DNA of 64,000 nt from Salpingoeca rosetta (taxonomy: Eukaryota > Protista > Choanoflagellata), in the NCBI GenBank assembly GCA_033442325.1, contig JAWQFM010000010.1:1189455-1253454 (forward strand). The letters are read 5' to 3'. This document shows positions 43,385 to 47,098 of this stretch, in pieces. How positions within the stretch are numbered: the stretch's first letter is position 1; each line of letters begins with the position of its first letter. The translations under genes and the position numbers were made by a program. Below the pieces are notes generated by a model. The model saw only the letters and a program-made list of their open reading frames with translations, ran no database searches and was not told the origin of the DNA.

Positions 43385-44423
43385 TCATAGACTGGCCTTG
43401 ACCAGCATGCCGCCATCGACGGGGATGACAGCACCGGTGATGTACGCGCCAGCACGGGAGCAGAGCAGCAACGTCACGCCCGCCATATCTGCCGGTCGGC
43501 CAACGCGGTGCATGGGTACGGCACTCACCACCTCGTCCCCAAGCTGTTCCAGTAGGGCTTTGGTCATCTTGGATGGAAAGGGCCCTGGGGCAATTGCGTT
43601 GATGCAGATGTGATCTTCGGCCAGCTTGGATGCCAGCACGCGCGTCATGTGGTGAATGGCGGCCTTGCTTGCGGCATAGCTGTATGTGTCTGTCAGCGAG
43701 ACCCCAATCCCTGTGATGGAGCCCACGTTGATGATGGAGGCGGGCGCCGCCTCCGTTGCGGCGGCCTTGAGCAGCGGCAGGAACAGCTGGACAAGCCGAA
43801 ACGCCGCCTTCACATTCAAGTTGAGCAGCTTGTCCCAGGCAGACTCCGGGTGCGTCTCCAGCGCTTCTCCCCAAGTGGCGCCGGCGTTGTTCACCAGGAT
43901 GTGCAGCCGGGGCTCGCCCGTCCTCTGAAAGGCAGCAAACAGGGCACCGCAGCCATCGAAGCTGGACAGGTCTGCTGGCAGCGGGTGACAGGATCCCCGC
44001 GCCGTTGCTCTTCTTGCTGTGACTGTTGTTGTTGTTGTTGTTGCTGTTCTTGTGCTGGCAGGGGTTGTTCTTGCTGTTGTTGTTGCTGGTGTGCACTGGC
44101 ATGCGGCGTCTCGCTCCTGTTGGTCTTGTTCCGCAAGTAGCCTGCACCGCTCGTTCACATACTTGGCAAACTTGGTGCAAGCGTCTGCTTTTCGCGAGCT
44201 CACATACACCTACGCCAGTGTGCAGCAGGATGCGCATGTCAAAACAAGTGCTTGTGCAACAACCAAAAGGAGGATGGGGCAGAGTGAGAGATGGAGATAG
44301 ATGGTCGGATGGAGAGGGAGGGAGGGAGAGAGATAGATGGACGGATAGAGAGAGATAGAGAGAGCAGTAACTTGATACACACACAGACACACACACACAG
44401 ACACACACACAGACACAGACACA

Positions 44424-44490
<67 letters not shown>

Positions 44491-44651
44491 CTGTGCCTTG
44501 CCTTTGCGCCGTTGACAGCGAGGGCTTCTGCGATCATTGCGCCAATGCCACGCGATCCGCCCGTGACTAGCGCTACTTTGCCACGCACATCAAACAGGTC
44601 TTGTGTTCGCAACCCACGGCCTCCATCGCGCTCGCGCTCATCCCCCATCAT
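43385..44651 (-). CDS. Classical short-chain dehydrogenase/reductase (RhlG-like subfamily)
   Basis: LFDVRGKVALVTGGSRGIG...NGAK/VYVSSRK...LVNNAGATWG...NVGS...YSYAASKAA...NAIAPGPFPSKMT...GAYITGAVIPVDGG. Two exons, 44651-44502 and 44209-43385. Confidence 0.92.
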
Positions 44652-45054
44652 CGTCAGTGACACGACACCATGAAAAGTAGCCAGACGGTTATTTTCGTCC
44701 CGCATCCACGTGTTTGTTTTGTTGGTGAGTTTGCGGCACTGACAGACCAAGCGTCAGTGCGAGTGTGAGTGTGCAAGTGCTCCGACGCTTCTTTGTGTTT
44801 GTTTGTTCCCTCTCTCGCACTCTCTTGCTTCGTCCCCCCCCCTCACTCACCTCTTGCTTTGCTTTGCTTCGCTCACAGCACATCGCACACTATTGGCTCA
44901 CCCCCTCCCTTCTTTGTTCTCCCCTCCCGACTTGCCTTGCCCTACTATTTTTACGGTTCTGTTAGCTAGTCATAGGTAGCTCGCTGTTGACCAGCCCCTT
45001 CCACCCCAGTCCTCCTCCGCGTCTTCGCCAGCCACTACAACACCACACGGATCG

Positions 45055-45109
<55 letters not shown>

Positions 45110-45176
45110 ATAGACAGCAACTACAGAGCAGGGAAATTGCCGACATCCATAGAGACGCATCCAGACAAAACGCATC

Positions 45177-46565
45177 ATGAGTGACACCGCAACAGCAATG
45201 AGCAACAAGAACGCTGGCGATGACCAGCCGCCAGCCAAGCAGGCCAAGGTCACGGCTGCACCCGCCAACGACGCCAACGATGCTGCCATGCCGGACATCC
45301 GCGTGGCCATCGTCGGCGTTGGCAACTGCGCCAAGTCGCTGGTTGAGGGCGTTCAGTACTACGTGGAGAACCCACACGACCAGGTCGGCCTCATGTATCC
45401 CGACATTGGCGGCTACACGGCCAAGCACCTCAAGTTTGTGGTCGGCTTTGACATTGATGAGCGCAAGTGCGGCAGGTCCCTGGCAGAGGCGCTGCGCGCC
45501 AAGCCCAACTGCGCCATGGACCACGTGCCGGAGATAACAGAGACCAGCGTGCCAGCTGCTGCGCGCGTGCACCGTGGACCAACGCTCGACGGCATCGCTC
45601 CGCACATGACGCAGTACCCGGTTGATACCACCTTCAAGGAGAGTGGCGACAAGCCCGTCACGTTGGACGAGGCCACGGAGATTCTGCAGCGCGAGAAGGT
45701 GGACGTGGTCATCAACTACCTGCCCGTCGGCTCACACGAGGCGTCTGCGTTTTACGTCGACGCGGCCGTGCGCGCGCGCTGCCACTTTGTCAACTGCATC
45801 CCGACCTTCATCTCCACCAAGGAGGCCAAGGCGCTGGAGCAGCGGTTCATTGACGCGGGCCTCACCATTGTGGGCTCGGACATGCGGTCTGCGTGGGGCG
45901 CGTCGCGCGTGAGCGAGGTGCTGCAGGGCGCCATGCTCGACTCTGGGCTCATGGTCACGCAGCACATCCAGATGAACATGGCGGCCGGCACCACGCAGGG
46001 CCACGAGACGCAGCGCACGGGGCGCACCGCAAACACGGACTTCCTGAACATGGCCAAGCAGGACCGATTGCACTCCAAGCACGTCTCCAAGGAGAATGTG
46101 CTCAAGGGCCAGAACGTGGTGCGCGACACAAGCACGGCGGGCATGACGCTCTTTGCGGGGCCCTCCCTCACCGTGCAGCAGAAACCAGGTGGCACGTACC
46201 TTGGCTCCGACAACAAGGTTGCCAACTTTGACATTGTTGCGTATGGGTTTGGCGGCGCGCGGTACGAGCTGACCGCCCGCCTCTCTGTGCAGGACTCGCC
46301 CAACAGCGGCGGTGTTGTGGTCTCTGCCATTCGCTTCTGCAAGGTGGCTGCCGAGCTGGGTATCGTTGGCTTCCTGCGTGGTGCATCCGCGTGGACGCAG
46401 AAGACGCCGCCGCTGCAGATGCGCACGGGTGACGCAAAGTTTGAGTGCGACGCGCTGTCCCGCCGTCAGCTCACGGACCTCACACGTGCGCAGCTGAAGG
46501 AGAACACGCCCGTTGCAGACACCCTTCCATACACGTTCCAGTCGGACACCCTCGACTACGAGTGA
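45177..46565 (+). CDS. ino1: Myo-inositol-1-phosphate synthase, prokaryotic (actinobacterial/archaeal) type, intronless
   Basis: Single 462-aa ORF: IRVAIVGVGNCAKSLVEGVQYY, VGFDID..K, RGPTLDG, DVVINYLPVGS, FVNCIPTFI, IVGSDMRS, NTDFLNM, RLHSKHVSK, DNKVA, DSPNSGGVV, QKTPP. Confidence 0.93.
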   Translation: MSDTATAMSNKNAGDDQPPAKQAKVTAAPANDANDAAMPDIRVAIVGVGNCAKSLVEGVQYYVENPHDQVGLMYPDIGGYTAKHLKFVVGFDIDERKCGRSLAEALRAKPNCAMDHVPEITETSVPAAARVHRGPTLDGIAPHMTQYPVDTTFKESGDKPVTLDEATEILQREKVDVVINYLPVGSHEASAFYVDAAVRARCHFVNCIPTFISTKEAKALEQRFIDAGLTIVGSDMRSAWGASRVSEVLQGAMLDSGLMVTQHIQMNMAAGTTQGHETQRTGRTANTDFLNMAKQDRLHSKHVSKENVLKGQNVVRDTSTAGMTLFAGPSLTVQQKPGGTYLGSDNKVANFDIVAYGFGGARYELTARLSVQDSPNSGGVVVSAIRFCKVAAELGIVGFLRGASAWTQKTPPLQMRTGDAKFECDALSRRQLTDLTRAQLKENTPVADTLPYTFQSDTLDYE

Positions 46566-47098
46566 CGCGCGCATACGCATGTGTGCGCATGTGTGCGTGT
46601 GTGCGTGCGTGTGTGCGTGCGTGTGTGCGTGCGTGTGTGTGTGTGTGTTTGGTGAATTGGCTGCGCGAGGTCGGGGCTTTATGTGTTGACTCAATCAATT
46701 GTGGAATTGAGACGCGTGGACTGTCCTGACTGGTCATACACTTGCCTTCCATCATGTCAGTCTTCACTGGTTCTAGTTCGTTCATTCTCTTGGTTTGTGT
46801 TTGTGCTTTCTTTCTCTTCTTCCTCCACGCCCACCACATCTTCTTCTTTCGTGTGTTTGCGTTATCATCGAAGCAATACAAACGCTGCCGCTGTCCAATG
46901 AATGATACTGAGCATGACAATCCCGAGCAATAGCACACAGACACACACACTCTCTCAACAACGTGCCATCAATACGCCAACAGCACACACGTCTAACGTG
47001 CGCGGACGCAGTGACCACAGATGTGCACAAAGACAACACACACACACACACACACACACAGAGAGCTGCTGTTCACGGTGCACTGATATGGGAAGGGA

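What the first reader, a model, noticed from the sequence alone, without database searches (positions are those of the whole stretch)
45177..46565. Intronless prokaryote-type inositol-1-phosphate synthase: likely horizontal acquisition
Seen: 1.39 kb with no introns among intron-dense neighbours, flanked by host-type (CA)n repeats. The motifs are of the short actinobacterial/archaeal type (VGVGNCA, YLPVGS, DSPNS) rather than eukaryotic INO1/ISYNA1 (GWGGNNG, LWTANTER). Unusual features are a ~12-aa insertion in the active-site lid (MAAGTTQGHETQRTGRTANTDF versus the usual GGNxDF), GSDMRS in place of GDDIKS, and an added N-terminus with NLS-like PPAKQAKV. Inference: HGT from a prokaryote or via a giant virus, replacing or supplementing eukaryotic MIPS, possibly with altered chemistry.
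Basis: partly seen in the sequence, partly recalled or inferred. Interest (0 to 1): 0.7.

Follow-up and report, generated by a model that had tools for sequence, protein, structure and literature searches.

The report
Choanoflagellate inositol-phosphate synthase of bacterial/phage origin
This intronless, well-expressed choanoflagellate gene for an inositol-phosphate-synthase-like enzyme came from the bacterial world, as a 2021 paper already reported; what I add is that most of its closest relatives sit in marine phages, inside DNA-modification gene clusters.

Summary
Window 45177-46565(+) is one uninterrupted 462-aa ORF flanked by (CA)n/(TG)n repeats and by intron-bearing eukaryotic genes. It is transcribed without splicing.

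The genome is Salpingoeca rosetta and the gene is PTSG_04054/EGD83447. Matriano et al. 2021 (PMC7971027) already list it as a zero-intron HGT candidate, so the core claim is known.

- **The "unusual" motifs are family traits.** The 15-aa insert at the active site and GSDMRS are invariant across a large prokaryotic/phage subfamily that is 58-74% identical to the query. They are not lineage-specific oddities.
- **Few eukaryotes carry it.** Only five choanoflagellate sequences were found, and they form one clade.
- **Most close relatives are in phages.** 214 IMG/VR contigs encode a relative. Of the 79 loci examined with the ORF, 74 also carry DNA-hypermodification genes. The published "Planctomycetaceae TMED10" best hit lies on such a phage-like contig. 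Some Spirochaetota and a Bdellovibrionales genome carry it in ordinary cellular contexts.
- **Donor unresolved.** Bacterium and phage both remain possible, and nothing points to a giant virus.
- **Probable role.** No canonical INO1 was detected in the genome, whereas IMPase was. The gene is therefore probably the cell's only inositol-3-phosphate synthase. Neither activity nor substrate has been tested.

The parts
45058..45108 (.). (CA)n microsatellite upstream of the gene. It probably lies inside the 5' UTR, because RNA reads run over position 45110.
   Evidence: Sequence read directly. 239 and 370 reads run over the ends of the laid stretch.
45177..46565 (+). Single-exon CDS of 462 aa plus stop. 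It encodes an Ino1-like NAD-dependent sugar-phosphate cyclase (PTSG_04054 / EGD83447).
   Evidence: ORF list. PF01658 scores 33.3 bits against a cut-off of 27. TIGR03450 scores 228 bits, below its cut-off of 638. 1GR0 matches at E 7.5e-57. Stranded RNA-seq depth is about 100-500 with no joints. Identified in PMC7971027 supplement.
45177..45290 (+). N-terminal extension (residues 1-38) that the prokaryotic and phage homologues lack. It varies among choanoflagellates and is predicted disordered. M38 sits where the prokaryotic proteins start.
   Evidence: Alignment A1. pLDDT is 36-37 over residues 1-30.
45873..45890 (+). GSDMRS (residues 233-238), in place of GDDIKS of M. tuberculosis Ino1. D235, M236, R237 and S238 are invariant in the subfamily and S234 nearly so.
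45984..46028 (+). 15-residue insertion (A270-T284) between catalytic-loop positions N267 and D288. It is conserved in the whole long-lid subfamily and is modelled with low confidence.
   Evidence: HMMER alignments to 1GR0. Multi-lineage alignment. pLDDT falls below 50 at 272-275 and 280-282.
46179..46196 (+). Second, 6-residue insertion (Q335-T340) relative to 1GR0, also shared by the whole subfamily.
46570..46650 (.). Imperfect (TG)n/(TGCG)n tract directly after the stop codon, probably within the 3' UTR.
   Evidence: Sequence. Reads run over 46570.

Best explanation
The feature is a real, single-copy, single-exon nuclear gene of the choanoflagellate Salpingoeca rosetta (PTSG_04054). It encodes an NAD-dependent sugar-phosphate cyclase of the actinobacterial Ino1 branch. 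It belongs to a distinct "long-lid" subfamily marked by a conserved 15-residue insertion in the active-site loop.

- **Origin.** An ancestor of several craspedid choanoflagellates took the gene from the prokaryotic gene pool, either from a bacterium or from a phage carried by prey. The phylogenetic pattern is shown. The donor and route are inferred.
- **History since transfer.** It has been inherited vertically, adapted to host codon usage, given a variable disordered N-terminal extension, and kept under strong purifying selection (shown).
- **Function.** It most likely converts glucose-6-phosphate to inositol-3-phosphate as the cell's only MIPS. Host inositol monophosphatases would then dephosphorylate the product for phosphatidylinositol synthesis. 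This follows from the conserved catalytic positions, the absence of a canonical INO1 and the presence of IMPase. Activity and substrate are untested.
For: **The gene is real and belongs to the host**
- The ORF is intact and single copy on a 1.89-Mb scaffold of the 55-Mb genome.
- Two stranded RNA-seq runs cover all of 45110-46570 at about 100-500x, with no splice joints or variants, and reads run over both ends.
- GC3 is 0.83, against a median of 0.22 in the viral homologues.

**Family assignment**
- PF01658 is over its cut-off. 1GR0 matches at E 7.5e-57, and the AF2 model (pLDDT 80.8) matches 1GR0 best, with TM 0.85 normalised to the target.
- D235, N267, D288, K301, K305, K347, D373 and K409 are invariant in 60 relatives. 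Their spacing fits the A. fulgidus residues D225, N255, D261, K274, K278, K306, D332 and K367. PDB entries exist for the N255A, K278A and K367A mutants. The mapping itself is my inference from motif spacing.

**Horizontal transfer**
- Thousands of prokaryotic or phage proteins of 424-432 aa are 70-74% identical.
- A profile built from the choanoflagellate sequences ranks only five eukaryotic sequences above that mass: 955 bits or more, against 822 or less. They are S. rosetta, Microstomoeca roanoka, Barroeca monosierra, Hartaetosiga balthica and one sequence from a public run.
- These five form one clade with SH-aLRT 99 in two trees.
- It is published as an HGT candidate with 0 introns.

**Role in the cell**
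- PF07994 gives no hit in the genome, and PF01658 hits only this gene.
- The same search method finds IMPase exon by exon at three loci.
Against: - No member of the long-lid subfamily has a measured activity that I could find.
- The protein scores far below the TIGR03450 equivalog cut-off (228 against 638).
- The conserved insertion splits the N267...D288 catalytic loop, and GDDIKS is changed to GSDMRS.
- Ari2 (6K96) keeps much of the same residue set but makes a five-membered cyclitol phosphate from another sugar phosphate. Conserved catalytic residues therefore do not fix the substrate.
- In phages the gene sits in DNA-hypermodification modules, which hints at a product used for something other than lipids.
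- The absence of INO1 rests on six-frame family scans of a single assembly.
- I did not measure how widely the gene occurs in other choanoflagellates. The paper labels it 'Urchoanoflagellate', whereas I found it in only five sequences.
Confidence: 0.7

Rival explanations
1. The gene and the transfer are the same, but the donor was specifically a T4-like marine phage, taken up directly or inside infected prey. In that phage the enzyme belongs to a DNA base-hypermodification pathway. The choanoflagellate then put it to use for inositol supply.
For: - P0001 hits phrog_33138 at E 5e-113, and 214 IMG/VR contigs encode relatives at 69-73% identity.
- 74 of 79 viral loci with the ORF carry a hypermodification hallmark. 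The hallmarks are a thymidylate-synthase-like gene, 5-hmdU DNA kinase, TET/JBP and amino-acid:DNA transferase.
- The MAG contigs labelled Marinovum, Flavobacteriaceae, Caulobacterales and Planctomycetaceae TMED10 have these same phage neighbours.
- In tree 2 the well-supported crown clade of 53 rows holds 32 phage-context rows against a few cellular ones.
Against: - The AU test does not reject a tree that places the choanoflagellates outside all 48 crown phage and bacterial rows (p 0.61, and the likelihood is slightly better).
- Genuine cellular carriers exist. Spirochaetota and Bdellovibrionales carry the gene among Rnf, ApbE, two-component and P-type ATPase neighbours. The Bdellovibrionales sequence sits in the same unresolved polytomy as the choanoflagellates.
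- Phage-to-eukaryote transfer needs an additional step.
Confidence: 0.4
2. The enzyme is not a true MIPS. The long-lid insertion changes substrate or product, so that it makes another cyclitol phosphate. The choanoflagellates would then use it for a metabolite other than myo-inositol and obtain their inositol from prey.
For: - The conserved 15-aa insertion lies inside the catalytic loop, and GSDMRS replaces GDDIKS.
- The score is far below the TIGR03450 cut-off.
- The related fold Ari2 carries out different chemistry.
- The prokaryotic contexts are DNA-modification modules and a capsule/polysaccharide locus, not inositol-lipid operons.
Against: - All eight catalytic positions, the NAD-binding motif and the C-terminal phosphate-binding lysine are invariant.
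- The protein matches a proven MIPS (1GR0) over about 385 residues at E 7.5e-57.
- The genome shows no other MIPS, although eukaryotes need inositol.
- In phages a HAD-like phosphatase directly follows the gene, and one precedes it in an Acidobacteriota genome. That pairing matches a synthase-plus-monophosphatase pathway.
Confidence: 0.2
3. The gene is bacterial or phage contamination, or a mis-assembly, and is not part of the choanoflagellate genome.
For: The gene has no introns, and its best hits are prokaryotic or phage.
Against: - It is embedded 1.23 Mb into a 1.89-Mb scaffold, between intron-bearing eukaryotic genes and host-type microsatellites.
- GC3 of 0.83 is far from the median of 0.22 in the viral homologues.
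- It is strongly and strand-specifically expressed, and the reads continue into both flanks.
- Orthologues occur in the transcriptomes or genomes of three other choanoflagellate species, and their branching agrees with the species relationships as I recall them.
Confidence: 0.01
4. The gene reached the choanoflagellates through a giant virus (NCLDV).
For: None was found. IMG/VR does hold giant-virus contigs, and some viral loci are long, up to 360 kb.
Against: Every annotated viral neighbourhood is of the tailed-phage type, with T4-like UvsX, PolB of phrog_262, a DnaB-type helicase, a primase and dCMP deaminase. The cultured carriers are Caudoviricetes infecting Ralstonia, Stenotrophomonas and Caulobacter.
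Confidence: 0.03

Closest known systems
Mycobacterium tuberculosis Ino1 (inositol-3-phosphate synthase, PDB 1GR0; NCBIfam TIGR03450)
   Same: It has the same fold (best Foldseek hit, TM 0.85 on the target) and the same short architecture without the eukaryotic N-terminal domain. It aligns over about 385 residues and shares the motifs GVGNCA, YLPVGS, N-x-DFLNM, SK..SK, DSPNS and K-x-PP.
   Different: The query has a 15-aa and a 6-aa insertion, GSDMRS in place of GDDIKS, and an extended C-terminus ending in YTFQ...DYE. It scores 228 bits against an equivalog cut-off of 638.
Phage-encoded ino1-like genes (Ralstonia phage RP13; Stenotrophomonas Menderavirus phages such as Moby; Caulobacter phage Cr30)
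   Same: RP13 is 60.6% identical and has both insertions. These genes are annotated as inositol-phosphate synthases in T4-like genomes.
   Different: The Moby and Cr30 types are only 39-45% identical, and Moby lacks both insertions (Cr30 was not aligned). Moby's copy sits in a 7-deazaguanine DNA-modification cluster. The uncultured marine phage copies are much closer, at 70-74%.
Eukaryotic INO1/ISYNA1 (yeast 1P1H/1JKI, C. elegans 1VKO, rice 9M53)
   Same: The overall MIPS fold and the presumed reaction are the same.
   Different: Identity is only 12-16% in structural alignment, and sequence search does not find them. The eukaryotic proteins are about 510-530 aa with an added N-terminal region. 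PF07994 does not hit the query.
Bacteroides thetaiotaomicron BT_1526 MIPS (PDB 7NWR; Heaver et al. 2022, PMC9246714)
   Same: It is a bacterial MIPS of similar length (426 aa) with proven activity.
   Different: It belongs to a different branch, the archaeal/eukaryote-like one. Identity is 15% in the structural alignment, and phmmer does not hit it.
Ari2, five-membered cyclitol-phosphate synthase (PDB 6K96)
   Same: It is the second-best sequence and fold match (E 1.7e-27) and shares several catalytic motifs.
   Different: Identity is about 25%. It lacks both insertions and carries out different chemistry. It shows that this fold can change product.

Membership tests
Myo-inositol-1-phosphate synthase superfamily (Pfam PF01658 Inos-1-P_synth) | The Pfam catalytic-domain model scores above its gathering cut-off. 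| tested here: met
   33.3 bits against a cut-off of 27, residues 285-374.
Myo-inositol-1-phosphate synthase superfamily | A Rossmann NAD-binding N-terminus and the MIPS fold. | tested here: met
   GVGNCA aligns to 1GR0. The AF2 model has pLDDT 80.8. The top 28 Foldseek hits are all MIPS or MIPS-like structures.
Myo-inositol-1-phosphate synthase superfamily | The catalytic Asn/Asp/Lys set (A. fulgidus D225, N255, D261, K274, K278, K306, D332, K367). | tested here: met
   D235, N267, D288, K301, K305, K347, D373 and K409 are invariant in 60 relatives. I mapped them by motif and spacing through 1GR0, not by superposition.
Myo-inositol-1-phosphate synthase superfamily | The enzyme converts glucose-6-phosphate to inositol-3-phosphate. 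| not testable with these tools
   I found no biochemical data for any long-lid member.
Actinobacterial Ino1 equivalog (NCBIfam TIGR03450, mycothiol_INO1) | The score reaches the equivalog cut-off. | tested here: not met
   228 bits against a cut-off of 638. I do not file it as this equivalog. It is a sister subfamily.
Eukaryotic INO1/ISYNA1 | A PF07994 NAD_binding_5 match, a length of about 510-530 aa, and motifs such as GWGGNNG and LWTANTER. | tested here: not met
   PF07994 does not hit. Identity to the eukaryotic structures is 12-16%.
Prokaryote-to-eukaryote horizontally transferred gene | A narrow eukaryotic distribution forming one clade within prokaryotic or phage sequences. | tested here: met
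   Five choanoflagellate sequences form one clade with SH-aLRT 99. In the profile search a gap of 955 against 822 bits separates them from the rest.
Prokaryote-to-eukaryote horizontally transferred gene | Physical integration in the host genome, and expression. | tested here: met
   1.89-Mb scaffold with eukaryotic neighbours. RNA-seq coverage. GC3 of 0.83 against a median of 0.22 in the viral homologues.
Prokaryote-to-eukaryote horizontally transferred gene | An identified donor lineage. | tested here: inconclusive
   The sister group is unresolved. The AU test allows the choanoflagellates to sit outside the whole phage and bacterial crown.

The most novel reading that the evidence does not exclude
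The long-lid Ino1-like enzyme would be a part of phage DNA-hypermodification toolkits. Together with the HAD-like phosphatase that follows it, it would make a free cyclitol that phages attach to hydroxymethyl-pyrimidines in their DNA. Choanoflagellates would have captured this phage gene, directly or through infected prey, and now use it as their only source of inositol in place of the ancestral eukaryotic INO1.
Probability: 0.2. Interest if true: 0.75.

Novelty: already known. Interest (0 to 1): 0.4.

Why it matters

Two points reach beyond that. First, the "bacterial" best hits behind the published HGT call lie largely on phage contigs binned into MAGs. Donor assignments in such screens can therefore mistake phages for bacteria, and a phage-to-eukaryote route becomes a live possibility for a housekeeping enzyme in the closest relatives of animals.

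Second, S. rosetta seems to rely on a non-eukaryotic, biochemically uncharacterised MIPS variant for inositol, the precursor of all phosphoinositide signalling. S. rosetta is genetically tractable, so this can be tested directly.

The link between this enzyme family and phage DNA-hypermodification clusters could also point to an undescribed DNA modification.

Tried and rejected
- **First AF2 model.** The alignment had 14 sequences and the model was poor (pLDDT 57, with residues 234-377 below 50). I replaced it with a 60-sequence run.
- **Careful ML tree.** It did not finish in the time limit, so both trees are quick IQ-TREE searches with SH-aLRT support only.
- **Nesting inside the phage radiation.** I first read tree 2 as showing the choanoflagellates nested among phage sequences. 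The AU test did not support this, so I dropped the claim.
- **Reads from older runs.** Contigs of runs X1 and X16 did not lay on the stretch. Only the two raw-read RNA runs are informative.
- The transcript ends were therefore not mapped.
- **Literature.** Searches linking inositol-phosphate synthase to phage DNA hypermodification or to auxiliary metabolic genes found nothing relevant.
- **PDB profile searches.** The neighbouring phage families A4 (phrog_13881) and A6 (HAD-like) gave nothing usable. The HAD assignment rests on weak Pfam and PHROG hits plus motifs.
- **Searches not run.** I did not run the large representative-protein search, because the word search and the family scans answered the question. 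I could not query the genome with a real eukaryotic INO1 sequence, since no tool had supplied one.
- **Short orthologue contigs.** The contigs for the B. monosierra orthologue and for the unnamed orthologue are too short to say anything about introns or flanks.
Full report
**1. What is in the window**

Positions 45177-46565 on the + strand hold one open reading frame of 462 codons. A (CA)n run lies at 45058-45108 and an imperfect (TG)n tract follows the stop.

The neighbours are ordinary eukaryotic genes. Upstream is a short-chain dehydrogenase on the minus strand whose coding pieces are separated by a repeat-rich stretch. Downstream is a gene that another reader noted as SSRP1.

The window is G000:C10:1189455-1253454, on a 1.89-Mb scaffold of a 55.4-Mb assembly. 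The protein is single copy in that genome.

**2. Identity of the organism and prior knowledge**

The protein matches a public entry exactly. The supplement of Matriano et al. 2021 (PMC7971027) lists EGD83447 / PTSG_04054 / F2U7N0 as "Myo-inositol-1-phosphate synthase".

- The entry has PF01658, a CDS of 1389 bases, 462 aa and 0 introns.
- Its best hit is Planctomycetaceae bacterium TMED10 at 71.8%.
- It is classed as foreign and shown in Figure S1-35.

The genome is therefore Salpingoeca rosetta, and the HGT call is already published.

**3. Expression**

Two stranded RNA-seq runs of 2026 cover all of 45110-46570 at a depth of roughly 100-500. The first mate falls on the minus strand, as expected for an RNA of the + strand. 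No joints, indels or variants appear, and hundreds of reads run over both ends.

The CDS is transcribed and unspliced. I laid only the stretch between the microsatellites, so I did not map the transcript ends.

**4. What kind of protein**

- **Family scans.** PF01658 is just over its cut-off and PF07994 does not match. NCBIfam TIGR03450 (actinobacterial Ino1) aligns end to end but scores 228 bits against a cut-off of 638.
- **Solved structures by sequence.** The matches are M. tuberculosis Ino1 1GR0 (E 7.5e-57), Ari2 6K96 (1.7e-27) and TM1419 3CIN.
- **Fold.** An AlphaFold model from a 60-sequence alignment has pLDDT 80.8 and pTM 0.84. It matches 1GR0 best (TM 0.85 on the target), then Ari2, TM1419, A. 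fulgidus MIPS, yeast, plant and worm MIPS, and BT_1526 at 12-17% identity.
- **Differences from 1GR0.** There is a 15-residue insertion (A270-T284), a 6-residue insertion (Q335-T340), GSDMRS in place of GDDIKS, and a longer C-terminus.
- **Catalytic positions.** D235, N267, D288, K301, K305, K347, D373 and K409 are invariant across 60 relatives. By motif and spacing they correspond to A. fulgidus D225, N255, D261, K274, K278, K306, D332 and K367. That mapping is my inference. The PDB titles confirm that N255, K278 and K367 were the residues mutated.

It is modelled with low confidence.

**5. The "unusual" features are family traits**

The word-based search returned more than 7000 relatives. 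After the choanoflagellate sequences, the best are proteins of 424-432 aa at 70-74% identity.

Both insertions and GSDMRS occur in marine phage copies, Ralstonia phage RP13, Spirochaetota, Sediminibacterium and Acidobacteriota. Both insertions are absent from Stenotrophomonas phage Moby and from 1GR0. I call this the long-lid subfamily. I found no characterised member.

**6. Distribution in eukaryotes**

A profile of the choanoflagellate sequences ranks five eukaryotic proteins at 955-989 bits and everything else at 822 or below. The five are S. rosetta, Microstomoeca roanoka, Barroeca monosierra, Hartaetosiga balthica and one sequence from a public run.

They form one clade with SH-aLRT 99 in both trees, with Hartaetosiga branching first. 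From my own knowledge, that order agrees with the species phylogeny.

The paper labels the gene family 'Urchoanoflagellate'. I did not find it in other choanoflagellates, but the search lists only the top 120 hits and only proteins of similar length.

**7. Who carries the closest relatives**

- **Phage family.** The protein hits phrog_33138, of unknown function, at E 5e-113.
- **Viral contigs.** A scan of IMG/VR found 214 contigs encoding a relative, including contigs of 115, 118, 172 and 360 kb.
- **Neighbourhoods.** I clustered all ORFs of 105 loci. The gene order around the synthase is strongly conserved and comes in two mutually exclusive forms.
  - Form A runs PolB, MazG-like pyrophosphohydrolase, primase, thymidylate-synthase-like protein, dCMP deaminase, synthase, a 128-aa HAD-like phosphatase, 5-hmdU DNA kinase, phrog_13881, C5 methyltransferase-like protein, UvsX.
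  - Form B runs UvsX, DnaB-type helicase, TET/JBP dioxygenase, amino-acid:DNA transferase, synthase, the same small phosphatase.
- **Counts.** Of the 79 IMG/VR loci with the ORF, 74 carry at least one of these hallmarks. 44 have the kinase and 18 the transferase, and none has both.
- **Mis-binned MAG contigs.** The contigs labelled Marinovum, Flavobacteriaceae, Caulobacterales, Rhodobacteraceae, Pirellulales and Planctomycetaceae TMED10 show the same phage neighbours. This includes the paper's best hit.
- **Cultured carriers.** These are Ralstonia phage RP13 (60.6%), sixteen Stenotrophomonas Menderavirus records (about 45%) and Caulobacter phage Cr30 (39%). In Moby the gene lies between FolE and QueC, a TGT-like transglycosylase and QueE, which together form a 7-deazaguanine DNA-modification cluster.
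- **Cellular carriers.** Spirochaetota and Bdellovibrionales carry the gene among Rnf, ApbE, two-component and P-type ATPase genes. More distant copies (58-61%) sit in a capsule/polysaccharide locus of Sediminibacterium and next to a HAD hydrolase in Acidobacteriota.

**8. Donor**

In tree 2 a crown clade of 53 rows (support 100, stem length 1.09) holds 32 phage-context rows, 12 of unknown context, 4 Spirochaetota and the 5 choanoflagellates. The choanoflagellates sit in an unresolved polytomy that includes the Bdellovibrionales row.

An AU test does not reject a tree with all 48 non-choanoflagellate crown rows held together. Its p value is 0.61 and its likelihood is 7.8 units better. The choanoflagellate clade may therefore be sister to the whole crown rather than nested in it.

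The donor lineage is not resolved. Bacterium and phage are about equally likely, and nothing suggests a giant virus.

The transfer is old. GC3 is 0.83 in S. rosetta against a median of 0.22 in the viral copies, and the gene is shared by at least four species.

**9. Likely role**

Six-frame family scans of the whole assembly find PF01658 only at this gene and PF07994 nowhere. The same method finds inositol monophosphatase exon by exon at three loci, so it can detect split genes.

The simplest reading is that this enzyme is the only MIPS of S. rosetta and feeds the usual eukaryotic route to phosphatidylinositol.

Against certainty stand four points: no biochemistry exists for the subfamily, the catalytic loop carries an insertion, Ari2 shows that the fold can change product, and the phage context is DNA modification.

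In favour of a synthase-then-phosphatase pathway, a HAD-like phosphatase directly follows the gene in 43 of the 49 loci that have one. That assignment is itself weak. It rests on PF03767 matches in 7 of 10 members with a best E of 0.003, on phrog_415, and on a DxDGV...TGR...K...DD motif.

**10. Verdict**

The HGT interpretation is right but already published. The "unusual features" belong to the donor subfamily, and the giant-virus route has no support.

The new element is that the closest relatives are mostly phage genes in DNA-hypermodification modules. This changes the donor question and raises an untested idea about phage DNA chemistry.

Noticed in passing
Loci L027-L106 (IMG/VR) and L005, L008-L011, L024, L025 (MAG contigs); for example L010:4827-12088 and L055:7302-12200: In marine T4-like phage contigs the long-lid Ino1-like gene sits inside DNA-hypermodification modules. 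These come in two mutually exclusive types, one with a thymidylate-synthase-like gene plus 5-hmdU DNA kinase and one with TET/JBP plus amino-acid:DNA transferase. A 128-aa HAD-like phosphatase nearly always follows the gene directly. I found no paper linking a cyclitol synthase to phage DNA modification.
   Followed up: partly
L005 and L025 (NHBP01000004.1 and NHBP01000076.1, 'Planctomycetaceae bacterium TMED10'): This is the published best 'bacterial' hit for the S. rosetta gene. Both contigs carry phage neighbours, including 5-hmdU DNA kinase, a methylase and UvsX, and L005 also carries a thymidylate-synthase-like gene and dCMP deaminase. They are probably phage DNA binned into a MAG, and the two copies are nearly identical.
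   Followed up: partly
L108 (Stenotrophomonas phage Moby, MN095772.1 28981-30231): A short-lid ino1 homologue lies between FolE and QueC, a TGT-like transglycosylase and QueE. This is a 7-deazaguanine DNA-modification cluster located between uvsX and the gene 41 helicase. It is a third kind of DNA-modification context for this enzyme family.
   Followed up: no
L023:2831-11480 (Sediminibacterium goheungense) and L014:5000-7272 (Acidobacteriota MAG): The cellular long-lid copies at about 60% identity sit in a capsule/polysaccharide locus (WecA-type glycosyltransferase, Polysacc_synt_2, two Wzi-like genes) or next to a HAD hydrolase. This suggests a cyclitol or sugar building block for glycans.
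   Followed up: no
window 43385-44750 (-): The short-chain dehydrogenase gene next door has a threonine/alanine-rich low-complexity stretch in its large exon. Its two coding pieces are separated by a stretch made largely of (CA)n.
   Followed up: no
window 45462: Four RNA reads of run X22 carry about 46 unrelated letters before position 45462, inside the CDS. This may be a rare chimera or a minor alternative 5' end. It is far below the main coverage.
   Followed up: no
window 45110-45260 and 45940-46140: There is low-level opposite-strand read signal, about 5% of the sense depth, in both RNA runs. It could be library leakage or weak antisense transcription.
   Followed up: no
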